From contig NW_026783008.1 of the NCBI RefSeq assembly GCF_031769215.1, positions 62,001 through 126,000 on the forward strand: a stretch of 64,000 bases of DNA, read 5' to 3'. A program made the translations under genes and the position numbers. This stretch comes from Ylistrum balloti (taxonomy: Eukaryota). Of this stretch, positions 1 through 53,069 are shown piece by piece. The notes under the pieces were generated by a model. That model was not told where the DNA came from. It worked only from the letters and a program-made list of their open reading frames with translations, and did not search any database. Position 1 is the first letter of the stretch. Each line of letters begins with the position of its first letter.

Positions 1-2666
1 AGTTGCTTTGGCATTTTAGTGCAACTTTTGTGTCTACAGTGATGTTGTGAACTCAAATATACAAGTCCTGGACTAGTGCTTTTCCTGTGGAACATGCTTG
101 AATTTTGAGAGCCCACCCTATCCCTTAGTAATTGGATTCATCAAAATTTTGAAAATGATGCTGTAGACTCCCTAAAAAAATCCCACAAAAATTACTGTGA
201 CAGAAATTACAAAATTCATCGAAAATATTAGGTATTTCCTTTGGGATTGTAGCTGAGTTTTGGTTGTTATGGACACCTGGCTGAATTCCTTAGTCCATCA
301 TACCCATATCACTACCACTACTGCCATTAGCCAAGATCTATGGGGGCTTACCTCTAATACCAGGGTTAGCTTTGATGTAAACAGGCGAAAGTACTACTGA
401 TTCCAGATGTAACGTTATAGTCTTAACACTGTAACCGGCCTTTCATCTGCCCTCCTGATCCTGTTTGAAGTGGTGTACATTCCTGAGTCCTATTCTAGTA
501 TTTAACACCACCATTGGCTGTACAGATAAAGCCCATTAAGTGTTTTCTGAATATTTGAAGAGGTTAGGAAATGAGCCCCGCAGGATATACTTCCTAAATC
601 ATCAAATGATTATGTAATGTAAACAACAAAAATAAGTAATTAAATCATTGTCATGCATCCTTTATCATCTCTCTGTTAAAATGGAGGTTTTATTGTAGAT
701 TTTACATAGTCATTCTTGGTTTTAATTCAGTTCACTTTAGTACTGAATTATAAGTACAAGATATAATTTGCTGACAAACACTACTTGTCGTTCATTGATA
801 GTACGGAACACTCACCCTGTCTTTGGCAAAATATAGCTAGTATTTCAGTTTTCGGAACATTCTCTTGAGGTTGGTGATGTCAACAGAGTAGAAGTCAGTG
901 ATAATACGCTCCATACCGGTCATTTGTCTGATAAAGGTAACATTGAAGTCATTGAAATGACACACTTAAATCTTCTACTGTCTGATAAAAAAACTTCTAT
1001 TCTGTAATATTCAGGTAATGATAAAAAATTCACTGCAAGTGGAACATAACTTTGTGAAATTATGAATGATTTTTGATGAATCTAGTTAAAACTTACATCA
1101 CACCAGCAAGGAAGTATAATATTTAATATAAGTATTGTATAGAAGTAACAGTGTAACTTTTACTTAACCTATGTAATACACTAAATATGTATTATTGAGT
1201 ATGATAAAAAGTTCTGTATGTTTTAGTATGAATTATATGTCATAATGTGAAAGCCATTATCAACACATCGATATAAATCTGCATTAAATGAAAATGTTTG
1301 TAAATGTTTGGACTTAAATAACAAAATTATCAACAAATCATTGTCAGCTAGTGTTATTAAGAATTAAGATATATATACATATTGATACCAGATACATATT
1401 CTTGATACCAAATTTTATTATCAAAGAAATGGAAAGGCATGACAGGTCAGGAAGAAAGGGAATGACTTAAGTGATAATGAATGATTTTTTTCTGTTTGTT
1501 CAGTGAACCATATCAATAACAATATATGTCTTTGTGGATATTATTTTCATGAAGCATGATAATTTGTTTGTAATATTTATGATCAGTCTACAGATACTAA
1601 ACGTGTGTTGACTTGTAATCACAAAGATAGGTGCACCTTTATCAATTAAGATAAACAGGTGTTGTTCACATCTGATCACATTACCTATATATATTTACCT
1701 GTACGACCACTGACCCAGTGGCGATCATGTGTACACATTACAGCCTACATTCATCTTTGAACCCTGTGAACCTTCTCCCACAATGCACTGCTTCATTGTT
1801 GATGTTTCGTGTCCGTGTATTTCCTGTTCTGGGGACAGTCTTAAAGTGTACTTTGGTTATGATTTATTTCAGTTTTGTGCATTGTCAGTGTTAAAGTCAA
1901 CTTGACGAGGATTTACCTTGTCTGTAACGGATCTCTACGTAGGTGTGAAGTTTAAATCTCCGGTAAAAGGTTAACGCGAAACGATTGATCGCTTGGAGAG
2001 AAATAGTGGGAAGGGTGTAACATGTTAGAGCTTGTAATATAGACACAGATATACAGACATGTAGGACGGACCCCAGGAGATGTGTCCCGACCCCTACACA
2101 GGTGGAATCAGGTCACTAACTTCATAGAGTCAGGTAGGCAATTCTGTCTGTAACACCGTGTGACAAGCTGTAATGGCCTTAGTCTAGACTTTGGTTTATG
2201 AATGGGTGTTATTGTGTAGGGCTCTATGGAGTCAGCTGAGCTATATCAACCTTGGACAAACTCATTCAGTATATTTGCTCTATTTTCTAACCTTGCTGTT
2301 TCTGCTTTCTTAGACAGTAATTTTATTTGAGATATATACAATAGTGTTGAATTTACCTGTAGACTCTATCTGTCATTAAACAGTGTGATATCATTATATT
2401 TCATTATTTAGTTCAGTCTGATCAGTACAAACCTGTTTGAACAATTATTTTGTGTAAGGCTAGCATGTATATCATAGCTTTGCTGACTTTTTCTGTAGCA
2501 TTACAGCAATTCTCAAGAAAACAGTAACGATGTTGGACTATGATACAGTGAGAATCGTGAAACTCCTGGAGACAGGGACTATTTACCAAATCTGTGGCTT
2601 CTTTTTGATCATTTGTACATAAGAATATGACTTATTTGGATTTCGATGTAGTATGTTACACACCAT

Positions 2667-2920
2667 GGGGGCCATGATGGCTTAATTGGTAGAGCCTAGG
2701 TATTCCCAGGTGGAGATCCAAGGTGTATGGTTTGATGCTCCAAACCTGTGGCATTTTGTTTGTTTCTCAAGAAGCTGAGAAACACACAGGTCGCTAATTG
2801 CTCTGGATGACATTACACAGGCTTCCTGTGTGTTGTTGTTCAGCGAGGTAGCCACCAACTGTCTTAATATGGTCCAGACTGTTTATAGGCTGATAAAAAC
2901 AGCATACAAACAAATAAACA
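2667..2920 (+). mobile_element. Decayed tRNA-derived SINE
   Basis: tRNA-like head GGGGCCATGA-TGGCTTAATTGGTAGAGC (A box 2678-2689), degenerate B box GGTTTGATGCTCC near 2729-2741, and an ACAAACAAATAAACAA-type tail. Family not assignable by eye. Confidence 0.55.
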
Positions 2921-3995
2921 AGCACAGTATACCTGTAACCAGTTTCCATCATCTACATTAATGTAGGTGAAGGTCGCAGGTTAAATAATCAGGGGTCAAG
3001 GTCTATGATTAAGTGAAATAATACGCTATTCTGTATCATGTCTCTATTATTAAATGTGGAGGTCGCTGATTAAATAATCAGAGGTCAAGGTCACTAATCA
3101 ATCAAAAACCTCTAGATAATCACATATTTAATGGCACCACGCCAGTTTGAAACATTGACCATGAATTAATTGTTTTCTATTAATGATGCTATTGCTCTGA
3201 GTTCAGAATTTTTATATTTATTTCACTAATATTGCGTAATATATGGAGTCAAAGACAAGGTCAGGTCACATGACATACTTTCCTAAGATCTTAGGAAGAT
3301 AAAATACCGATGTGTACAGATCTGTGTAAATGAGATCAGGAGTCACAGAGTTCATTGCAAAACCAATCCAGGTAACATCTTCTTCCTGAGGTGTTTGGTT
3401 GATTAGTCAGATGGATATTTTCATGCTTCCTTTCATCTGGTAATAGCTGGGGTTTAATTAAATTTAAATTAAATAGACAAAATTTAGTAGATTTCATGGA
3501 AGTTGAGAGTATGTTGTGTTTACAATCAGGATAAGATTGGGGGGTGGGGAAGTGATTTAAATTCTAAAAGTTTCAGTTGATGTAGAAATATGTTTTAATG
3601 TTTACTAGATACAAAAGTCTGTTTTATTTTGTTCATTTGACAGATAATCAGTTAGAAACAATAGAATGTGAAAGTCGGTATTTAGTGTGAGAAAATTCAG
3701 GAGAGATGATGAGAACTTTGTGATCTATTATTAAAGATGAATGACATGCATGAATAACTCAGGATCGTGGAGGTTGACACAGCTTAATGTTATCCTATCA
3801 TGTCAGCTCTAAGCTTTCATTCATAATTATGTAAATGAGGCAAGCAAAATATGTGTATTGGGGGCGGACACGCCATCTAAGGTATATAGGTGTGACAGTA
3901 TCAAGTGTATCCTTACCTGGCTCACTGCAAAGGCCTTAAAAAATATCTGTTACAAAGGTGACTGATTCATGTGATGTGGAAACTTTAACTGGCTC

Positions 3996-4463
3996 ACACT
4001 GTACACCTAGACGGATCCTGTGATGTACCTTTACTGGCCCTCAGTGTAGACCTAGACAGATCATGTGATGTACCTTTACTGGCCCATAGCGTAGACCTAG
4101 ACAGATCATGTGATGTACCTTTACTGGCCCTCAGCATAGACCTAGACAGATCATGTGATGTACCTTTACTGGTCCACAGCGTAGACCTAGACCGATCATG
4201 TGATGTACCTTTACTGGCCCACAGCGTAGACCTAGACAGATCATGTGATGTATCTTTACTTGCCCTCAGCATAGACCTAGACAGATCATGTGATGTACCT
4301 TTACTGGCCCTCAGCGTAGACCTAGACCGATCATGTGATGTACCTTTACTGGCCCACAGCATAGACCTAGACAGGTCATGTGATTTGGTACCTTTACTGG
4401 CCCTCAGCGTATACCTAGACAGATCATGTGATGTACCTTTACTGGCCCACAGCATAGACCTAA
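3996..4463. repeat. 45-bp minisatellite, about 10 copies
   Basis: Unit GTAGACCTAGACAGATCATGTGATGTACCTTTACTGGCCCTCAGC; explains the 15-aa periodic ORF 3994-4563. Confidence 0.95.
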
Positions 4464-6049
4464 ACAACAAAGAATACTGAAACAACTTTGAAGAATTGGG
4501 AAGGGAGAAATGTGTATCTATATATACCTTGTAACAGGAACTAGATATAATGGTATGATTCAAAACTTACACGAGTGATCTTGACCTGAGTGGCTGAGGT
4601 AAAGTTATACCCAGGTAATACACCTGAAACACCATACCAGTTAATACTTAAAACACCTGGATTTCCTTTCCTTCAACCTCCTAGCAGAGAGATGTAACAC
4701 TCAAAAGAAAAACGTATCAAAAACTTCTGTTTGACATGTAACCATACAGAATATTTTGAAAATTGCCAACAAGTTGAACCACTTTTTTCAATATTATTTT
4801 AATAAACAGCCTACAATGCAATTATTTAAAAGGTTCTGTCAGATAAAAATGTTCAGTCTTTTTTAAGTCATTGACATCAATTTGTATGAAAACTCGGGTA
4901 GTGATTTTCTCTGGTATATGGAGGGCCTGATGTGCTTGTATTACAAGAAGGATATGAAAAGGGACTGAAACTTGTGTCACATCAGCTCGCTGTTACAACA
5001 AGTTATTTCTGTTCCTTCTTATAAATAATAGATGTAATTATTACTGGCATATTATACAGATGTGATGGGAGATGCAACAGAAAATCTGCTTCGTTACCGT
5101 TCTGTGATTCAGTGTCCTGAGACTTTGTATAATTTCTGTAACTAATAAGTAAACTTGCGATAAAAATACACAAATTATGCAGATATAAAAGTTCTTTTGC
5201 CAGAGTCTAAACTCTGATGATAGGAAAACTCACTTTCATCATTATAGAAATATTTTCAAAATATCTAGAAGAAAAAAAACGATGTTTCAGGACTAAAGGA
5301 TATCTATTTGAATGAGATCACTCCAGGAATTTCACTCAGTACACAAAAACTAATACAATAGTTTATCTTTATATACATTAGTGGTTCATTCATTCCTGTG
5401 TACACTTCTACACAAACATCTTGCTTGTTTTACTATGTCCTATAGTGTATGGATTGATGCTAGGTTTTTTCTGTGGTTCTAAATATGGGTCCCATTCCTA
5501 ATTTGATTATTTTAAAATAAAATTTTCGAAATATATAGTTTACTTCCAAAATTTCCTTCTAAATTGATCAATTATTTTCCCAAAATGAGATTTAAAACTG
5601 CCCTGCCATTTCCTCAGTGATAATTCTTTTTCATTTTCTGCATCATAAGAGGTTAATTAAAATGCTTTATTTCTTCATTGACAAAACTAATATACATCAG
5701 TCACCATGTAAAGCTAGTAATGATCATTTAGGTTTAACTAAAGGGAGATTACTCATTGCTGTACACATGGAAAACTTTCTTGGATAAAGGGATATTGAGC
5801 ATGGTTTTAAACCTATGTCTGGCCAATCACTGGAAATATTTCAGGTGGAGGTCTTTTTCCTTCAATATTTTGGCAAGTTCATTATCATCTGTGATACAAA
5901 AAATGTTGTTTTATTTTGATGAATCTTTTAATTGGAACTGGACACTAAATGCTTTTTCATGCCAATATTACTGTTGTTTCACATTAAACAGGAAATGTAA
6001 TGTAAGGTTTTTGTGACCCAGAATTCAATGTATTTTAGACATCTCCTGA

Positions 6050-38204: not shown

Positions 38205-38938
38205 GTTCGTCAACGAGTGGGAGAGCGCGGTCTGATCCAACACACCAACATCACTCCCAGCTTCACTCCCACTCCCACTCCGCCCATCAGGGTCAGGGAG
38301 TACAGTACCCTACAATGGAGTGTGAGAGTCCAGCATCAGGGCCTCCTCAGGTGGTTCCTACGTATCAACAGCCACCAGCCAATCAAAATTGGGCACCAGC
38401 GAGTGACAGTCGTCTCCAGGGTAACAGTTCTCATCGACATCACTCTCATCACCACTCGTCTCGGCAACACCAATCTCCTCCACAGTTGCCACCCAGCGGT
38501 ACAGCACCGCAGATGGTGGCACAGCATAACGCACCACAGCCACAGATGCAGCAGGCCATACTGCTTGGGTCAGTCGGATATCCTAGCAACTCTAGCAACT
38601 TCACATCATCACGGACTACGTACCCCGCCACGGCGGGGATGGCTGTTGACCTAACAACCAATCTGCAAGGTCATGGCCACCCGCAGGTCATACATAACGA
38701 CCCTGCACAGCTGTCTGCTGTGAACATGGTTGGTTATCCTACATCCCAGTATGGACCTCAGTACTCACAACAGACTTGGCCCACTGCCGGATTCAACTTC
38801 TCAATACAGACTAATGTAAATGCTAGTAATCCTGGCCATGACGTGAACAGCCAACACTCGCGTGCGGCTGCCGAACGTGGGGAGGACTCACCAATGCATG
38901 GGGTTGTTGTACAGCAAAGTCCTGTGGCTAGCCATTGA
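38205..38938 (+). CDS. DYRK1A: DYRK1A terminal coding exon (His/Gln/Pro-rich tail); alternative acceptor at 38202
   Basis: CAGTAG tandem acceptor, both in the phase required by the previous exon; GSSTSGRARSDPTH...EDSPMHGVVVQQSPVASH, stop TGA 38936-38938. Confidence 0.92.
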
Positions 38939-40985: not shown

Positions 40986-42598
40986 ACAGGGGGACAGGAT
41001 AAACAACTGCAACAAAAAAAAAATTTAAGACAGAAAAATAAACAGATGATGAAGATGTAGTTGAAGTCATGTGATGAAAGAGAAAAATGAATACATTTGT
41101 CAGTAAGCCATTAATTGAGTAGGATGAGAACTTCTTGGTGTTTAAAAATGGTCTTTGGTCCCTTGCAATAAGGTCAGGTTGACGTATTATAAAAACCTCA
41201 GAAAGCTATTGGAGCAACAGACTTTTGATACTCTTATGATTTATCTTTATAACCGGAAATAATAACACTGCTGCAAACCTGTACTGACATACTGGGTAGA
41301 TCTTGTGTTCTTGGATGGTTTACTCAACTGTCAAAGGGAGATAATTTTTCTTATATTTTTTTTTTTTTTTTTTGATCTTTTAAAGAAAACATGATCAGTA
41401 AATTGACATAATTCTTAATAATATTTGGTCATATGCAAATGAATTATACAACTTGAACAATTTATCTTACATAAATAGCTGGCTTATTCCTACTCAAAGA
41501 CTTAAGGAAGAAATGGTCATAAGCAATGTTAATTTAAGATTTTTAGATAGTTGAAAACAGTTATCAATAATAAAAAGTGTTATGATACTAACCTCTGTAC
41601 CAACATTTAAGGTGCCAAATGTTTATTGCCAAATTCTTATGTCAGGTTTTTTTTTTTTTTTTTTGTCAATTTCTTTTTTGACAATAATGATATATGAAGA
41701 CATATTTGATGGTTGGCTGGCTTTGATTTCTGTAGAGTAACCAGTTTTTAATTAATTTAAAATAAGTATATCTGACAGGTAATTTTTCTGACATTTGAAA
41801 TCATGTCTAAATCATTTTTTATTAAAACTTACCTTTTTTTGGGGGGAAATATAATTTTCATGCTGGGGAATATAAAAAATAAAATGAGCAGGTGGAAAAA
41901 TAAATACAGGAAGGGAAAAAAATTCATCGTGATCATAATATTAAGAATTAAAATGTTTACAAATTATTAAGTGATGTAGGAAAAACATTAAAGCAGAACA
42001 CAATAACGTGTCTTGGGGGAGGGGGTGGGGGGGAATGTGGTCTGGTAACAGACTTACTAATATGTAATATATAGATTCCAGGAACAGGTGTCATCTTTTT
42101 AAATCTTTAGTTTTTAAGTGAAAATTCTACAATGTAAATGTTTCAACTAAGAAAAAGGAGACAACAGTGTTTAGCAGTTTGTTTTAAAAATCTCTATTTC
42201 TTTGTCTTATCATGCAACCAAAGCCGATCTTAACAAGAGAGCGTGTGTGTATGCGAGAAGTAAGAAAAGATGTGAAAATTTTATCATTTTAGCATATAGA
42301 TAAATCCTGAACTTTATAGTTCACCCTAGGTTCGCTTCTCACAGTTTCCTGTCTAGGGGGAGGTAACTCCGTGGTCACCTGGTGTCTCATTGGATGTTCA
42401 CCACCCTGAAATATCTCTCTCTACCAGTTTGAGTTTTAATGTGTGTTACCACGACATTCTAAAGGGGTGACCAGGTTCATTTATTTTGTATAAAGTTCAT
42501 TGTAAGTATCCAACCACTCGCCTCATTAAAGTGTCACCAAGATGATATTTGTGTTATGTTTTCTTTACTGCACCACTTCATCCTAAAAGTTATAAGTT

Positions 42599-43071
42599 AA
42601 AACATGGATGATGTATTGTTTGCTATCACTTAGATCAGAGGAGTTAAAACATGGATGATGTATTGTTTGCTATCACTTAGATCAGAGGAGTTCAAACATG
42701 GATGATGTATTGTTTGCTATCACTTAGATCAGAGGAGTTCAAACATGGATGATGTATTGTTTGCTATCACTTAGATCAGAGGAGTTCAAACATGGATGAT
42801 GTATTGTTTGCTATCACTTAGATCAGAGGAGTTCAAACATGGATGATGTATTGTTTGCTATCACTTAGATCAGAGGAGTTCAAACATGGATGATGTATTG
42901 TTTGCTATCACTTAGATCAGAGGAGTTCAAACATGGATGATGTATTGTTTGCTATCACTTAGATCAGAGGAGTTCAAACATGGATGATGTATTGTTTGCT
43001 ATCACTTAGATCAGAGGAGTTCAAACATGGATGATGTATTGTTTGCTATCACTTAGATCAGAGGAGTTCAA
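42599..43071. repeat. 47-bp minisatellite, 10 near-identical copies
   Basis: Unit AAACATGGATGATGTATTGTTTGCTATCACTTAGATCAGAGGAGTTC. Confidence 0.97.
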
Positions 43072-43617
43072 TAGTTAAGAGAATATGCTGTTGGATATGT
43101 CTATCAAACAAGGAAAAGGAAATAACGACGTTAAAAAATAATTTTTGAACAAGGGTTTTCTGGAACAGTCTGCATCTACTACACCTACTGTGTAAATTTT
43201 GGTCAAACAAATATGCTCAGCTCTTGGGTTTGTGACTAATGCAACAAAACTAGGTGTTCTGACTGCATCAAATCTCTAATATCAAACAAGGAAATGATAT
43301 GTTTTCCACTGATGGTTACAAGTTCACCATAATCAACCTATATCTCTCCAGTCCCTTTGTTATTATAACTTATCAGTCAGCTATCCACATCGTTAAGCTT
43401 AAGATTGTTTGTTGAAAATCAAAGAAAGTAGAACATGTCAATAGAATCATAATCCGGTCAAACTAAATAAATCTAGGACAAAATATGAACAAAACAGAGG
43501 ATTACAGTAGACTCGGAAAAATAACGAGGTCAGACTAGGATTTTGACAAGAAAAGATAAGGAAGCTTCCTCACGAGAGAATTGAATAGAACGTACGGCGA
43601 GACATTGAATTCAAACT

Positions 43618-43655
43618 GCATCACAAGAAGCCTCGTCCTTCTTGGACTCGAATGC
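43618..43655 (-). pseudogene. Decayed second hammerhead ribozyme
   Basis: Minus strand: GCAUU[ACUGA missing]CGAG UCC AAGAA GGAC GAGGC UUCUUG UGAUGC. Stem II and both stem I arms are recognisable; the core is broken. Confidence 0.5.
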
Positions 43656-43673
43656 TGAAGACTTTAATTGTTA

Positions 43674-43905
43674 GTACTCTTCGTTAATGCTATGGGCCCA
43701 AATTACTAGTACTTTCCAATGATGTTATTGGCCTAAATTAATAGGACTCTTCAGTAATGCTATGGGCCAAAATTTCTCAGACTCATCCGTGATGCTATTG
43801 GCCTAAATTGCTAGGACCCGTCAGTGATGCTATGGGCCTAAATGTTAAGACTCATCAATGATACCATTGGATTAGTTAACTAGGACTCTTCAATGATGCA
43901 AAGGG
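43674..43905. repeat. 35-bp degenerate minisatellite built from hammerhead 5' halves, 7 units
   Basis: Plus-strand GGACTCNTCAGT(A/G)ATGC-like motifs start near 43674, 43709, 43744, 43779, 43814, 43848 and 43883. Confidence 0.75.
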
Positions 43906-43995
43906 ACTAAAATAGTCTCCCTGATTATACTAGAATGTGCACAACTGGATAGTACCATTTTAATGTTAACGTATAGTTATATAATGAATAAAAGT

Positions 43996-44036
43996 GCACC
44001 ATACATATGTTTCTTCCAGGGACTCGTCAGTAATGC
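43996..44036 (-). ncRNA. Minimal type I hammerhead ribozyme, near-intact (one C11.1-to-A change)
   Basis: Minus strand: GCAUUA CUGACGA G UCCCUGGA A GAAA C AUAU GUA UGGUGC. Stem I GCAUUA/UGGUGC, core CUGANGA and GAAA, 1-bp stem III with palindromic AUAU loop, GUA cleavage triplet (cut between 44002 and 44001). Confidence 0.75.
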
Positions 44037-44299
44037 CAAGAGTCTATAATTGTAAAGCTAGGAGACGATTGAAAAAAATCCAAAGTGAGCGAATCAGGAC
44101 ACTTTTCTATACATTAGTTTAGTTAAATAGATGTTTTCTTGAAAATTTGTACGTTTTTTCCATGCACGTCTTTCGCGAATATCATGCAAGTAAAAAAACC
44201 AAAGAAAATACCGAAATGTCAACAGTCTTAATTCAAATCACATTCAATGAAGATTGGGTATTATTTGAACAAAAGAAATACACGGAGACTAAGACAAAG

Positions 44300-46389: not shown

Positions 46390-49300
46390 AACGGGAAAAC
46401 GACAGTAAGAACTGATATCAAATTAGAAACGGGAACGTGACAGGAGACACTGACATTACAGCAAAAAACGGGAAAACGACAGTAAGAACTGACATCAAAT
46501 TAGAAACGGGAACGTGACAGGAGACACTGACATTACAGCAAAAAACGGGAAAACGACAGTAAGAACTGACATCAAATTAGAAACGGGAACGTGACAGGAG
46601 ACACTGAAATTACAGCAAAAAACGGGAAAACGACAGTAAGAACTGACATCAAATTAGAAACGGGAACGTGACAGGAGACACTGACATTACAACAAACAAC
46701 GGGAAAACGACAGTAAGAACTGACATCAAATTAGAAACGGGAACGTGACAGGAGACACTGACATTACAGCAAAAAACGGGAAAACGACAGTAAGAACTGA
46801 TATCAAATTAGAAACGGGAACGTGACAGGAGGCACTGACATTACAGCAAAAAAAACGGGAAAACGACAGTAAGAACTGATATCAAATTAGAAACGGGAAC
46901 GTGACAGGAGACACTGACATTACAGCAAAAAACGGGAAAACGACAGTAAGAACTGACATCAAATTAGAAACGGGAACGTGACAGGAGACACTGACATTAC
47001 AGCAAAAAACGGGAAAACGACAGTAAGAACTGATATCAAATTAGAAACGGGAACGTGATAGGAGGCACTGACATTACAGCAAAAACGGGAAAGCGACAGT
47101 AAGAACTGATATCAAATTAGAAACGGGAACGTGACAGGAGACACTGACATTACAGCAAAAAACGGGAAAGAACTGACATCAAAACAGAAACTGGAAGGTG
47201 ATAGGAGAATTTGACATCAAAACAGAAACTTGAAAACGACTGTAAGAATTGACATCAAAACAGAAACTTGAAAACGACAGTAAGAATTGACATCAAAACA
47301 GAAATTTGAAAACGACAGTAAGAATTGACATCAAAACAGAAACAGGATAACGACAGTAAGAATTGACATCAAAACAGAAACAGGATAACGACAGTTAGAA
47401 TTGACATCAAAACAGAAACTTGAAAACGACAGTAAGAATTGACATCAAAACAGAAACTTTAAAACGACAGTAAGAATTGACATCAAAACAGAAACTTGAA
47501 AACGACAGTAAGAATTGATATCAAAACAGAAACTTGAAAACGACAGTAAGAATTGATATCAAAACAGAAACTTGAAAACGACAGTAAGAATTGACATCAA
47601 AACAGAAACTTGAAAACGACAGTAAGAATTGATATCAAAACAGAAACTTGAAAACGACAGTAAGAATTGACATCAAAACAGAAACCGGAAAGTGACAGGA
47701 GAATTTGACACCAAAACAGAAACTTGAAAACGACAGTAAGAATTGACATCAAAACAGAAACTGGAAGGTGATAGGAGAATTTGACATCAAAACAGAAACA
47801 GGATAACGACAGTTAGAATTGACATCAAAACAGAAACTTGAAAACGACAGTAAGAATTGACATCAAAACAGAATTGACATCAAAACAGAAACTTGAAAAC
47901 GACAGTAAGAATTGACATCAAAACAGAAACTTGAAAACGACAGTAAGAACTGACGTCAAAACAGAAACTTTAAAACGACAGTAAGAATTGACATCAAAAC
48001 AGAAACAGGATAACGACAGTTAGAATTGACATCAAAACAGAAACTTTAAAACGACAGCAAGAATTGACATCAAAACAGAAACAGGATAACGACTGTAAGA
48101 AATTATATCAAAACAGAAACAGTACAGTGACAGTAAGCATTGACATCATAACAAAAATGGGAAAACGACAGTTAGAATTGACATCAAAACAGAAACTGGA
48201 AAGTGACAGGAGGAATTGACATCAATACAGAAACTGGAAAATGACAGGAGGAATTGACATCAAAACAGAAACTGGAAAGTGACAGGAGGAATTGACATCA
48301 GAACAGAAACCGGAAAGTGACAGGAGAATTTGACACCAAAACAGAAACTGGAAAGTGACAGGAGAATTTGACATCAAAACAGAAACCGGAAAGTGACAGG
48401 AGAAATTGACATCAGAACAGAAACTGGAGAACAGAAACGGGAAAGTGACAGGAGGAATTGATATCAAAACAGAATAAGAATTGACATCAAAACAGAAACT
48501 GGAAAGTGACAGGAGGAATTGACATCAAAACAGAAACTGGAAAGTGACAGGAGGAATTGACATCAAAACAGAAACTGGAAAGTGACAGGAGGAATTGACA
48601 TCAGAACAGAAACTGGAAAGCGACAGGAGGAATTGACATCAAAACAGAAACTGGAAAGTGACAGGAGGAATTGACATCAAAACAGAAACTGGAAAGTGAC
48701 AGGAGGAATTGACATCAGAACAGAAACCGGAAAGTGACAGGAGAATTTGACATCAAAACAGAAACTGGAAAGTGACAAGAGAATTTGACATCAAAACAGA
48801 AACTGGAAAGTGACAGGAGAAATTGACACCAAAACAGAAACTGGAAAGTGACAGGAGAATTTGACACCAAAACAGAAACTGGAAAGTGACAGGAGAATTT
48901 GACATCAAAACAGAAACCGGAAAGTGACAGGAGAAATTGACATCAGAACAGAAACTGGAGAACAGAAACGGGAAAGTAACAGGAGGAATTGATATCAAAA
49001 CAGAAACTTGAAAACGACAGTGAGAATTGACATCAAAACAGAAACTGGAAAGTGACAGGAGGAATTGACATCAAAACAGAAACTGGAAAGTGACAGGAGG
49101 AATTGACATCAAAACAGAAACTGGAAAGCGACAGGATGAATTGACATCAGAACAGAAACTGGAAAGTGACAGGAGGAATTGACATCAAAACAGAAACTGG
49201 AAAGCGACAGGAGGAATGGACATCAGAACAGAAACTGGAAAATGACAGGAGGAATTGACATCAGAACAGAAACTGGAAAGTGACAGGAGGAATTGACATC

Positions 49301-51050
49301 AGAACAAAAACGGGAAAACCGCAGTTAGGATATATATCAAAACAGACACCGGAAAGCGACAACAAGAATTGATATCAGAACTGAAATAGGAAAACAAAAG
49401 TTAGAACTGACATTAAAACAGAAACTGGAAAGTGACAGGAGGAATTGACATCAAAACAGAAACTTGAAAGCGACAGGAGGAATGGACATCAGAACAGAAA
49501 CTGGAAAGTGACAGGAGGAATTGACACCAGAACAGAAACGGGAAAACCGCAGTTAGGATATATAACAAAACAGACACCGGAAAGCGACAACAAGAATTGA
49601 TATCAGAACTGAAATAGGAAAACAAAGGTTAGAACTGACATTAAACAAAAACTGGAAAGCGACAGGAGGAATTGACATCAAAACAGAAACTGGAAAGCGA
49701 CAGGAGGAATGGAAATCAGAACAGAAACTGGAAAATGACAGGAGGAATTGACATCAGAACAGAAACTGGAAAGTGACAGGAGGAATTGACATCAGAACAA
49801 AAACGGGAAAACCGCAATTCGGATATATATCAAAACAGATACCGGAAAGCGACAACAAGAATTGATATCAGAACTGATATAGGAAAACAAAGGTTAGAAC
49901 TGACATTAAAACAGAAACTGGAAGGTGATAGGAGGCACTGACATCAGAACAAAAACGGGGAAATGACAGTAAGAACTGACATCAAAACAGAAACTTGACA
50001 TCTGTAAAAAAACAGAAAAAAAACTTGAAAACGACAGTAAGAATTGACATCAAAACAGACATCAAAACAGAGACAGGAAAACGACAGTAAGAATTGACAT
50101 CAAAACAGAAACTTGAAAACGACAGTAAGAATTGACATCAAAACAGAAACAGGAAAGTGACAGGAGGCACCGACATCAGAACAAAAACGGGGAAATGACA
50201 GTAAGAACTGACATCAAAACAGAAACTTGAAAGTGACTGTAAAAATTGACATCAAGAAAAAAAACTTGAAAACGACAGTAAGAATTGACATCAAAACAGA
50301 AACTTGAAAACGACAGTAAGAATTGACATCAAAACAGAGACAGGAAAACGACAGTAAGAATTGACATCAAAACAGAAACTTGAAAATGACAGGAGGAATT
50401 GACATCAAAACAGAAACTGGAAAGTGACAGGAGGAATTGACATCAGAACAGAAACCGGAAAGTGACGGGAGGAATTGACATCAAAACAGAAACTGGAAAG
50501 TGACAGGAGGAATTGATATCAAAACAGAAACTTGAAAATGACAGGAGGAATTGACATCAAAACAGAAACTGGAAAGTGACAGGAGGAATTGACATCAGAA
50601 CAGAAACCGGAAAGTGACGGGAGGAATTGACATCAGAACAGAAACCGGAAAGTGACGGGAGGAATTGACATCAGAACAGAAACTGGAAAGTGACAGGAGG
50701 AATTGACATCAAAACAGAAACTGGAAAGTGACAGGAGGAATTGACATCAAAACAGAAACTGGAAAGCGACAGGAGGAATTGACATCAGAACAGAAACTGA
50801 CATCAAAACAGTGACAGGAGGAATTGACATCAAAACAGAAACTGGAAAGTGACAGGAGGAATTGACATCAAAACAGAAACTGGAAAGTGACAGGAGGAAT
50901 TGACATCAGAACAGAAACTGGAAAGCGACAGGAGGAATTGACATCAAAACAGAAACTGGAAAGTGACAGGAGGAATTGACATCAGAACAGAAACTGGAAA
51001 GTGACAGGAGGAATTGACATCAAAACAGAAACAGGAAAACAACAATTAGA
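46390..51050. repeat. 4.6-kb satellite of 38-bp monomers (about 120 units) with zonal variants and higher-order repeats
   Basis: 77-bp dimer at ~46390-47160; TTGAAAACGACAGTAAGAATTGACATCAAAACAGAAAC zone; CTGGAAAGTGACAGGAGGAATTGACATCAAAACAGAAA zone. Strongly A/purine-rich + strand. Confidence 0.96.
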
Positions 51051-53069
51051 ACTAACAGCCAAAAAAAACCACACAACACGATTGTTTTCCAAATAAAAGG
51101 TAAAACAGTTTCAGAAATAGGCATCAAAAGGGACTGGAAACACGGACGGCTCATCAATGACCGTGGTAAAATCAAAAGACATCACCATTAGGGAAACAGC
51201 AAAACAAAAGAAACAATAGTTTGGGAGGAAGGAAGGTGCATATATAAACATATATAATACAAAAAATATAAATATAACATATACGGTTGATTATCACTAA
51301 CGTTTTTACAACCATCGATATCGGGAAGCGAGATGATTTGGGAAACAGATGAATGGACAGGAGCTGTGAAGATAATAAAAGATAACAAAAAAATGTATGA
51401 AGAATCGAAACGACAAAGAAAACAACAGAAAACCACAACATTTTTATAACTTCATCCTAGATGATACGTGTAGGTCATTTAAAGCAATAACACGTTCTAA
51501 AACTGAGAACCAGGTCAATAAAAACGAAACTAATAGGCATTGACGCGCACACTCGTATTCAAAATATTTTCCTTCAACGTTAACATGTGATAATGAATTC
51601 GTGATTTGATGAAAAAATACAGAAATAATTTGAGGAGACGTAACTAAAGAAACAACAGTAATCCAAGCAGAGGAGAAAGTGGGTGAAGCGTTATGTTAAG
51701 CAGTTTCGTGCAATTAATGGCAACTGAAAAAAACATCAATTGTATAGTATGACGAAAGTAATAAAAAAACAAAAACAAAACCAAAAAATGAATAAAAACA
51801 AGCAAAAACCTCCTTTGCGATTCATTACGGATAAAAATCTAAATTGCAATATCTGAAAATTCTTAAATATCAAGCAAAAAGAATGGCATAACATTATCGT
51901 TAACTGAACGTTGCCATATTCCAAAAGTTTGTTAATACATTCTTTGTGTTTATCATAAAAAAAAAGAAGTTTAATCTTCGTCCGTCTCGCCTTTTATTGA
52001 TAAGGGCGATAATGAGTTACTAAACTTTTACGGGCAAATTTTGCATTGGCTGAAAATAAACAGTTCCAAAAAGAAACTCAGATTGTTAGCCCGTAGCAGT
52101 AGTCGTCACTGTACTCAACATTTATTCCATATGGAAAAACAATAACTGCAATGTTCAGTCGAAATACATAATCACTAATAATGAAGCAAAACAAACTTAA
52201 CCATTTTTATATCTTTATATCATTCATTACAAAGATTACATAAAGGACACACAAATATTTAATGCAAATTAAGAATTTAGTGCAGTAAACATCATTATAC
52301 AGCTCTTTCGTCTTTTAAGGGCTAAGTACGGAATTATATACATGTTGATGTCCATGGTCTAGGGGCCAAAGTACTGAACCCCATGAGTGACCGAGGGAAA
52401 ATCCAAAATCATTAAAAGAAATGTAAAAATCTAGATGGGGAGGTGCGAAATTTGTGTGCATGCCTAACACAGGTAAGTTAAACGTAATCATGCACAACCT
52501 AGTTTGGTAATATTTCGTTAATTTACCACCACCCCCCCCCCCCCCAAAAAAAAAAAAAAAAACAAAAACAAAACATTTTTATCCATTTAATCTAAATTGC
52601 CAGTTAACAATCGTATTTAAGACTTTCTAAAACTTAGATTTACACGATATATCACAACGTTCCATTTGGATTTAGACTGGCTACCATCCCTTTAGTTGTT
52701 TTTTTTTTTTTGTCAAAGAAACACACCGTACAATTTTTGTACTTTCGGGATTAAATGTTACCAAGAGATCAGAATTATAAGACTCAATTTTATCTAAAAC
52801 ATTCTAGAGAGTGGGACCTATCTAATTTGCTTTGCATTATTAAAATGGATTGTTTCCTTGGAAATCACATTTTAGTATAATGAAATCTCGCCTCAATATA
52901 CACATTAGAATAAATACGGACAGATCAGTTAGTAATAAGGAAGATTGATCCAGTAATGAAGGGGGTCCCAGGAAATTTAGGGGATCTTTCTGCTAACAGA
53001 GGCTGTTGACAAAAACATCAACAACAAAATGTTTGGGTTGGTAGTAACAGAAATGGCAACATAATCATA

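What the first reader, a model, noticed from the sequence alone, without database searches (positions are those of the whole stretch)
43618..44036. Retrozyme-like module: two hammerhead ribozymes about 380 nt apart on the minus strand
A near-intact minimal type I hammerhead (44036-43996; GUA site; palindromic AUAU loop III, the dimer-active design known from Penelope-associated and satellite hammerheads) is followed ~380 nt downstream by a decayed second copy (43655-43618). Hammerhead-bounded monomers of a few hundred nt are the architecture of non-LTR retrozymes that yield circular RNAs. The module is transcribed convergently to DYRK1A, next to its 3' end. The single C11.1-to-A change probably weakens cleavage.
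Basis: partly seen in the sequence, partly recalled or inferred. Interest (0 to 1): 0.78.

Follow-up and report, generated by a model that had tools for sequence, protein, structure and literature searches.

The report
Decayed hammerhead retroelement copies beside DYRK1A
The two hammerhead-ribozyme motifs are real, but they are worn-out remains of a very abundant short mobile repeat that carries such a ribozyme, so the locus is an ordinary genomic fossil and not a working circular-RNA factory.

Summary
Both motifs are at the stated coordinates on the minus strand. They are there by descent, not by chance. A profile built from 29 genomic copies of a ~415-nt dispersed repeat matches 44092-43938 (E 1e-21) and 43671-43593 (E 2e-6).

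This family is non-coding. It has a fixed 3' end, variable 5' truncation, head-to-tail more-than-unit copies and thousands of members. It carries a minimal type I hammerhead with a 2-bp helix III and a palindromic loop. It coexists with intact Penelope-like elements (RT plus GIY-YIG ORFs). That places it in the known non-LTR retrozyme / Penelope-dependent class.

The locus itself is not a retrozyme unit:
- The ~380 nt between the two cleavage sites consist of a 3' tail, a 35-nt minisatellite of half-ribozymes and a 5'-truncated second copy. Positions 1-270 of the family unit are missing.
- Hammerhead 1 scores 18.4 bits against a threshold of 34. It has lost 3 nt of stem-loop II and carries the C11.1-to-A change, so stem II cannot form.
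- Hammerhead 2 has lost the CUGA box, the GAAA box and its cleavage triplet.
- Both copies are about 25% diverged from the family consensus.

Verdict: observation confirmed, interpretation partly supported, ordinary relic. Earlier notes of this scan report the same family on other DNA of this genome.

The parts
43921..44101 (-). Copy 1 of the ~415-nt hammerhead-bearing repeat. It is 5'-truncated (profile positions 230 to ~412), reaches the family's fixed 3' end (here ...gtataatc) and is 73% identical to the profile consensus.
   Evidence: nhmmer with a profile of 29 genomic copies: aligned 44092-43938, envelope 44101-43921, E 1.2e-21. Own-genome BLAST gives more than 40 copies at 74-83% identity. 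Identity.
43996..44036 (-). Hammerhead 1. The core boxes CUGACGA and GAAA, the GUA site, a 6-bp stem I and the palindromic ACAUAUGU helix III are kept. Stem-loop II is shortened by 3 nt and C11.1 is changed to A.
   Evidence: RF00163 at 18.4 bits (gathering 34). Profile alignment shows the 3-nt gap. Fails the strict descriptor. The hammerhead fold has +1.4 kcal/mol.
43672..43913 (-). 35-nt minisatellite, about 7 units. Each unit equals profile positions 271-305: 13 nt upstream, the 5' strand of stem I, the CUGAnGA box and the first strand of stem II. These are half-ribozymes with no cleavage site.
   Evidence: TRF gives period 35 x 6.9 at 71% matches, and period 70 at 77%. nhmmer unit hits to model 264/272-306. 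Register listing.
43545..43671 (-). Copy 2, in register as the eighth unit of the array and running on to the family 3' end (...gtcaaaatc). It corresponds to profile positions 270 to ~412 and is 77% identical to the consensus where aligned.
   Evidence: nhmmer 43671-43593, envelope to 43573, E 1.9e-6. BLAST of the query's 3' part to family copies L023, L025, L026, L029. By-eye extension to the common 3' end.
43618..43655 (-). Hammerhead 2 relic. A 5-nt deletion removes the CUGA box, GAAA reads GAGG and the cleavage triplet GUA reads UG. Stem II (GUCC/GGAC) survives.
   Evidence: Profile alignment. Sequence. Its minimum-energy fold is an unrelated hairpin.

Best explanation
The locus is a compound fossil of a very abundant ~415-nt non-coding retroelement of this genome. 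The family belongs to the non-LTR retrozyme / Penelope-dependent class. Each unit carries one minimal type I hammerhead, about 85 nt before a fixed 3' end. Helix III of that hammerhead is only 2 bp with a palindromic loop, so it should cleave as a dimer of two ribozymes.

Family copies show the signs of target-primed reverse transcription by a Penelope-like RT/endonuclease. They have constant 3' ends and variable 5' truncation, and often a partial upstream unit joined head to tail.

In the window, two 5'-truncated copies lie head to tail 9 nt apart. The first 35 nt of the downstream copy have been multiplied into a ~240-nt minisatellite of half-ribozymes. I infer, but have not shown, that this was most likely one Penelope-style partial-tandem insertion with template switching, or otherwise two nested insertions. 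It has since decayed neutrally to about 25% divergence.

Neither hammerhead should cleave now. The locus should not yield a circular RNA, and it has no evident function for the neighbouring DYRK1-type gene.
For: Family:
- Own-genome searches give more than 40 scored copies out of 281 to 5455 first-look candidates.
- Alignments show a common 3' end and staggered 5' starts from profile position 2 to 212.
- The longest copies carry a piece of the 3' tail joined to position 1. At least 5 further loci span that junction.
- There is no tRNA-like head and no other Rfam family in a full-length copy, and no ORF.
- The family-type hammerhead scores 34.1 bits on RF00163. All of the genome's 20 best RF00163 hits, up to 41.6 bits, lie in this family.
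- As a dimer it folds into a double hammerhead with an 8-bp helix III at -33.3 kcal/mol.
- Autonomous Penelope-like elements coexist: 51 GIY-YIG hits, 755-aa open frames, and an ORF with RVT_1 plus GIY-YIG.

Locus:
- Profile hits to copy 1, the array units and copy 2.
- Identity to the consensus is 73% and 77%. The two copies are 61% identical to each other with one shared derived site, which indicates independent decay.
- Neither motif passes the strict descriptor.
- Only 11 of 50 dispersed copies elsewhere still pass it, so decay is the norm.

Literature:
- Animal retrozymes of 170-400 nt with type I hammerheads, including about 5000 in a mussel, and Penelope-like elements as their likely mobilisers (PMC7229834).
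- Dimer-type minimal hammerheads and more-than-unit copies in Penelope-like elements (PMC4209133).
- Partial tandems and tails (PMC8557442).
- Dispersed monomer derivatives (bioRxiv 10.64898/2026.07.22.740005).
Against: - No autonomous Penelope-like element sharing the family's 3' tail or hammerhead was found in the twelve 3-kb GIY-YIG loci I could read, so the mobilising partner is inferred.
- No target-site duplication could be found around either copy or the composite, so one event versus two is unresolved.
- Cleavage incompetence is predicted from sequence and folding only. A G10.1-A11.1 mismatch with a 2-bp stem II might keep trace activity in a dimer.
- Copy numbers are lower bounds or extrapolations, not a census.
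- No expression data were available.
Confidence: 0.87

Rival explanations
1. It is a working retrozyme locus. The minus strand is transcribed, both hammerheads cleave (perhaps as a dimer), and the ~380-nt product is ligated into a circular RNA.
For: Two hammerhead-derived motifs lie in the same orientation about 380 nt apart, a spacing within the 170-400 nt reported for animal retrozymes (PMC7229834). Hammerhead 1 keeps both core boxes, the GUA site, stem I and a palindromic helix III, which still pairs as an 8-bp helix in a modelled dimer.
Against: Hammerhead 2 lacks the CUGA box, the GAAA box and a cleavable triplet. Hammerhead 1 cannot form stem II and scores 18.4 against 34 bits. The intervening sequence is not the family unit. 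Both copies are about 25% diverged. The palindromes of the two sites differ, so they could not pair with each other as a dimer.
Confidence: 0.03
2. The hammerhead resemblance is a chance motif in AT-rich repetitive DNA.
For: The Rfam score is below threshold, with E 0.38 even in a 1.6-kb search. A loose core pattern is matched in 34 of 100 shuffles of the window.
Against: The motif lies inside a 155-nt match to a repeat-family profile at E 1e-21. The consensus of that family at the same positions is a threshold-level type I hammerhead.
Confidence: 0.01
3. The relic has been co-opted as a regulatory element at the 3' end of the DYRK1-type gene, for example as an antisense transcript or as part of the 3' UTR.
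For: It lies 4.6-5.1 kb downstream of the stop codon at 38938. Retrozyme copies that overlap exons are reported to favour 3' UTRs (bioRxiv 10.64898/2026.07.22.740005).
Against: The ribozyme strand is opposite to the gene, so it cannot cut the mRNA. The sequence is as diverged as a neutral relic. The surroundings are satellites: 47 nt x 10 at 42595-43071 and a 4.7-kb satellite at 46390-51051. There is no evidence that the 3' UTR reaches this far.
Confidence: 0.04
4. The two copies are solo pseudo-LTR ends of an autonomous Penelope-like element, not copies of a non-autonomous retrozyme-type family.
For: In Penelope-like elements the hammerhead lies in the pseudo-LTR near the 3' end, and 5'-truncated insertions leave just such ends (PMC4209133, PMC8557442). 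Intact Penelope-like ORFs exist in this genome.
Against: In the longest family copies, the sequence upstream of unit position 1 is the family's own 3' tail and not an ORF. The unit therefore closes at about 415 nt. No family similarity was found next to the GIY-YIG ORFs sampled. There is no RT-like ORF near the module in the window.
Confidence: 0.05

Closest known systems
Animal non-LTR retrozymes (Cervera and de la Pena 2020, PMC7229834; Li, Clavereau and Pollet 2026, bioRxiv 10.64898/2026.07.22.740005)
   Same: A short non-coding unit of about 415 nt with one type I hammerhead. It has head-to-tail more-than-unit copies, thousands of copies with many dispersed decayed monomers, and coexists with autonomous Penelope-like elements. 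The size is close to the 350-390-bp mussel repeats.
   Different: The window locus is not a tandem of family units, and neither ribozyme is intact. Circular RNA was not tested. In the sample I could read, the family appears mostly as dispersed 5'-truncated copies with a fixed 3' end, not as long tandem arrays.
Minimal dimer-type hammerheads of Penelope-like element pseudo-LTRs (Cervera and de la Pena 2014, PMC4209133)
   Same: A type I hammerhead with a 2-bp helix III and a 4-nt palindromic loop, predicted to be active only as a dimer. It lies near the 3' end of a retroelement that inserts as partial tandems.
   Different: No RT/endonuclease ORF belongs to the 415-nt unit. Helix I (6 bp) and helix II (4 bp) are of the classical kind, not the long helix II and short helix I described for many min-HHRs of Penelope-like elements.
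Sm-alpha of Schistosoma and newt satellite 2 (hammerhead-bearing SINE-like or satellite repeats; from my own knowledge and as cited in PMC7229834)
   Same: Abundant repeats of a few hundred nt, each carrying one type I hammerhead that needs dimerisation.
   Different: There is no sequence relationship. No tRNA-like head was found here.

Membership tests
Hammerhead ribozyme type I (Rfam RF00163) | Score at or above the curated gathering threshold (34 bits) | tested here: not met
   Window hammerhead 1 scores 18.4 bits and hammerhead 2 is not reported. Family-type copies score 34.1 bits, and array units up to 41.6 bits.
Hammerhead ribozyme type I (Rfam RF00163) | Conserved core: CUGANGA, GAAA and a cleavable UH triplet | tested here: met
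   This holds for hammerhead 1 only (CUGACGA, GAAA, GUA). Hammerhead 2 has lost all three.
Hammerhead ribozyme type I (Rfam RF00163) | Stem II closed by the G10.1-C11.1 pair, with at least 3-4 bp | tested here: not met
   Hammerhead 1 has a G10.1-A11.1 mismatch and a 3-nt deletion, which leaves about 2 bp. The hammerhead fold has +1.4 kcal/mol.
Hammerhead ribozyme type I (Rfam RF00163) | Self-cleavage activity | not testable with these tools
   This needs in vitro transcription of monomer and dimer constructs.
Animal non-LTR retrozyme | Short non-coding unit carrying a type I hammerhead | tested here: met
   Met at family level: a 415-position profile, no ORF, and the hammerhead at positions 284-331.
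Animal non-LTR retrozyme | Head-to-tail tandem of complete units, so that two ribozymes bound one monomer | tested here: not met
   Not met at this locus. The interval between the sites lacks unit positions 1-270 and is mostly a 35-nt minisatellite. The family does have canonical unit junctions in at least 10 loci.
Animal non-LTR retrozyme | Coexistence with autonomous Penelope-like elements | tested here: met
   51 GIY-YIG hits, 755-aa open frames, and RVT_1 plus GIY-YIG in one ORF. No shared tail or hammerhead with the family was found.
Animal non-LTR retrozyme | Expression as linear and circular RNA of unit length | not testable with these tools
Penelope-like element pseudo-LTR | Continuity with an RT/GIY-YIG ORF in full-length copies | tested here: not met
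   The longest family copies close on themselves at about 415 nt. There is no RT ORF near the module.

The most novel reading that the evidence does not exclude
The hammerhead of this family is a hot spot where minisatellites are born during reverse transcription. The 35-nt half-ribozyme array in the window, a similar one on contig C645, a 96-nt array (L029) and the 45-nt whole-ribozyme arrays of 5-27 units in at least 14 loci all overlap the ribozyme. On this reading they arise when the Penelope-type RT stalls and re-primes at the stable double-hammerhead helix, or copies very small ribozyme-bounded circles. The window composite would then be the product of a single such event, not of later slippage.
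Probability: 0.12. Interest if true: 0.5.

Novelty: new member of a known kind. Interest (0 to 1): 0.14.

Why it matters
The locus itself matters little. It is one more decayed copy among thousands and shows no sign of function. Two things are useful. First, it shows that an apparent two-hammerhead retrozyme module can be an accident of truncated copies plus a minisatellite. Such calls should therefore be checked against the family's own unit before a circular RNA is proposed. Second, the family offers material for the open question of how animal retrozymes are copied. It has a fixed 3' end, more-than-unit copies and ribozyme-centred arrays.

Tried and rejected
- Rfam at gathering thresholds over the whole window gave nothing.
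- A strict hammerhead descriptor (stem I at least 4 bp, stem II at least 3 bp, stem III at least 2 bp) gave nothing in the window or in twelve Penelope-like loci.
- Target-site duplications were sought around copy 1, copy 2 and the composite. None was better than shuffles.
- Shared derived mutations between copy 1 and copy 2, which would show a recent local duplication, amounted to one site. An apparent shared motif seen by eye was an alignment shift.
- A link to an autonomous Penelope-like element was sought with the family profile and Rfam on the GIY-YIG loci L071-L082. No match appeared, apart from one weak stray copy in L071.
There is therefore no census and no full-length Penelope-like element.
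- A tRNA- or other RNA-derived SINE head was not found.
- The bacterial-type promoter and terminator scan is uninformative for a eukaryote.
- The weak SNORD41, SNORD103 and PreQ1 hits nearby are far below threshold and taken as chance.
- The organism was not identified. Another agent's note calls it a scallop, which I did not test.
- The window is not human. It has an invertebrate-type DYRK1 C-terminus and Penelope-like elements, and no human sequence was handled.
- A profile and a majority consensus of the non-coding 415-nt repeat were used inside scripts, only to give coordinates and divergence. No consensus of an autonomous element was made.

Full report
**Observation**

On the minus strand, 44036-43996 reads as a type I hammerhead. 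It has stem I (GCAUUA / UGGUGC, 6 bp with two G-U pairs), CUGACGA, a short stem-loop II, GAA, helix III (AC-AUAU-GU) and the site A, with cleavage between 44002 and 44001.

- Rfam Hammerhead_1 aligns to it end to end, but at 18.4 bits against a gathering score of 34, with E 0.38 even in a 1.6-kb search. Nothing in the 64-kb window reaches any Rfam gathering score.
- A loose core pattern finds only this site, yet a third of shuffles also give a hit. On the motif alone the case is weak.
- The second motif, 43655-43618, keeps a GUCC/GGAC stem II and the stem I strands but little else.
- Between the two lies a 35-nt tandem array, 43672-43911, of 6.9 copies at 71% matches.

**Homology settles it**

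The window is G000:C1151:62001-126000 of a 648.5-Mb eukaryotic assembly. A search of that genome with 43560-44140 (minus) returned more than 40 dispersed matches at 74-83% identity. They cover the stretch around hammerhead 1.

Aligning these and a second harvest defines a repeat unit of about 415 nt.
- The 3' end is constant (...GTCTTTTGTACAATC).
- The 5' starts are staggered, from profile position 2 to 212 in the copies held.
- In the longest copies, a fragment of the family's own 3' tail is joined directly to position 1.
- At least five further loci span this canonical junction. L036 and L048 are tandem dimers.
- First-look candidate counts were 4289-5455 for family queries.
- Extra copies turn up every 10-20 kb in the flanks of fetched loci and in the window itself. 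The family therefore has thousands, perhaps tens of thousands, of members. This is an extrapolation, not a census.
- The unit has no ORF, no tRNA-like head and no other Rfam family.

**The family ribozyme**

Positions 284-331 of the profile are a textbook minimal type I hammerhead.
- It has stem I of 6 bp, CUGACGA, stem II (GUCC-UAGAA-GGAC), GAA, helix III of 2 bp with the palindromic loop AGCU, and a GUA site.
- It scores 34.1 bits on RF00163 in a dispersed full-length copy.
- All twenty of the genome's best RF00163 hits, up to 41.6 bits, lie inside copies of this family.
- Two copies cofold into the classical double hammerhead with an 8-bp helix III at -33.3 kcal/mol. This is the dimer-dependent design described for satellite and Penelope-associated hammerheads (PMC4209133, PMC7229834).
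- Only 11 of 50 dispersed copies still pass a strict descriptor, so most copies are decaying.

**Class**

The genome holds autonomous Penelope-like elements. There are 51 GIY-YIG matches, several in 755-aa open frames, some in 5.36-kb tandem spacing, and one ORF with both RVT_1 and GIY-YIG.

The family's features are those of animal non-LTR retrozymes and of Penelope-type insertion (PMC7229834; PMC4209133; PMC8557442; bioRxiv 10.64898/2026.07.22.740005):
- a short non-coding unit with a type I hammerhead;
- a fixed 3' end with 5' truncation;
- partial tandems;
- coexistence with Penelope-like elements.

I could not find the partner element.

**Anatomy of the window locus**

All coordinates are, with the register of the array.
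- Copy 1 spans 44101-43921 (profile 230 to ~412) and contains hammerhead 1.
- Nine bases later the 35-nt array begins at 43913. Each unit equals profile positions 271-305. That is 13 nt upstream of the ribozyme, the 5' strand of stem I, the CUGAnGA box and the first strand of stem II. A unit is a half-ribozyme with no cleavage site.
- The eighth unit runs on into copy 2 (43671 to ~43545), which reaches the family's 3' end.
- The roughly 380 nt between the two sites are therefore tail, minisatellite and the start of a truncated copy. Unit positions 1-270 are absent.
- The spacing resembles a retrozyme monomer only by accident.

**State of the ribozymes**

Relative to the family, hammerhead 1 has a 3-nt gap in stem-loop II and A instead of C11.1.
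- The G10.1-C11.1 closing pair is lost and at most 2 bp of stem II remain.
- The hammerhead fold costs +1.4 kcal/mol, and in a modelled dimer helices I and III form but stem II does not.

Hammerhead 2 has a 5-nt deletion that removes the CUGA box. It reads GAGG for GAAA and UG for the GUA triplet. Neither passes the strict descriptor.

**Age and origin**

- Copy 1 is 73% and copy 2 is 77% identical to the profile consensus.
- The two copies are 61% identical to each other with a single shared derived site. This is what independent decay from consensus-like sequences predicts, and it argues against a recent local duplication.
- The array units are as diverged from one another (71-77%) as the copies are from the family. 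The array is therefore old too.
- Typical family copies are 82-87% identical to one another, so this locus is older than the bulk of the family.
- No target-site duplication is detectable.
- My inference is a single Penelope-style partial-tandem insertion with template switching. Two abutting copies in the same orientation with similar divergence point that way, and the family often inserts as more than one unit. Two nested insertions are not excluded.

**Context**

- Exons with DYRK1 hallmarks lie on the plus strand. One exon matches DYRK1A chains at E 1.6e-47.
- The last coding ORF ends at 38938.
- The module lies 4.6-5.1 kb downstream on the opposite strand, so its ribozymes could not cut that mRNA.
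- It sits between a 47-nt x 10 repeat (42595-43071) and a 4.7-kb satellite (46390-51051).
- Transcription of the module is not shown by anything I could run.

**Verdict**

The locus is an ordinary, old relic.

Earlier notes of this scan describe the same family elsewhere in this genome. They include a follow-up that counted more than 3,400 such motifs, and another locus with a half-ribozyme minisatellite. I did not verify those counts.

The one thing worth a further look belongs to the family, not to this locus: minisatellites of three different periods recur, and all are centred on the ribozyme.

Noticed in passing
L001-L020 and L063, for example L007:1004-1545 (G000:C348:~515500-516040); also C874:485750-485975 and C645:1052305-1052520: Many copies of the family carry the whole 45-nt hammerhead (profile 284-331) multiplied head to tail 5-27 times, between the element body and its 3' tail. 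Each array has its own loop II variant (TAACA, AAAAA, CACA, TAGAA), and up to three quarters of an array's units (typically a third to a half; none in two arrays) keep an intact core and stem II. Adjacent units could form the active double hammerhead, and cleavage would give 45-nt RNAs.
   Followed up: partly
L022:1484-1830 (G000:C645:~140010-140350); L029:1653-1883: A second 35-nt half-ribozyme array covers the same segment (profile 272-306) in about 10 units, without family flanks. A 96-nt array elsewhere repeats the 3' half of the ribozyme plus the tail start (profile 293-359). Internal arrays of three different periods all overlap the hammerhead.
   Followed up: partly
window 52231-52466 (-): A third relic of the same family (profile 199-412, E 6e-18). 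It has a ~20-nt insertion inside the hammerhead and a 25-nt deletion in the tail.
   Followed up: yes
window 42595-43071: A 47-nt tandem repeat of 10.1 copies at 99% identity, so very young or homogenised. The weak SNORD103 hit inside it (18.4 bits against 45) looks like chance.
   Followed up: no
window 46390-51051: A 4.7-kb satellite with nested periods of 38, 76/77 and 114 nt (about 100 copies of the 38-mer). The short minus-strand ORFs listed at 48.2-49.6 kb are artefacts of this repeat.
   Followed up: no
G000:C422:240415-261997 (L082 = C422:244273-247521): Five Penelope-like RT/GIY-YIG ORFs lie in tandem at 5.36-kb spacing, four of them with 755-aa open frames. This looks like a recently active autonomous Penelope-like element arranged head to tail. 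No canonical hammerhead was found in the 1.3 kb downstream of the ORF that I could read.
   Followed up: partly
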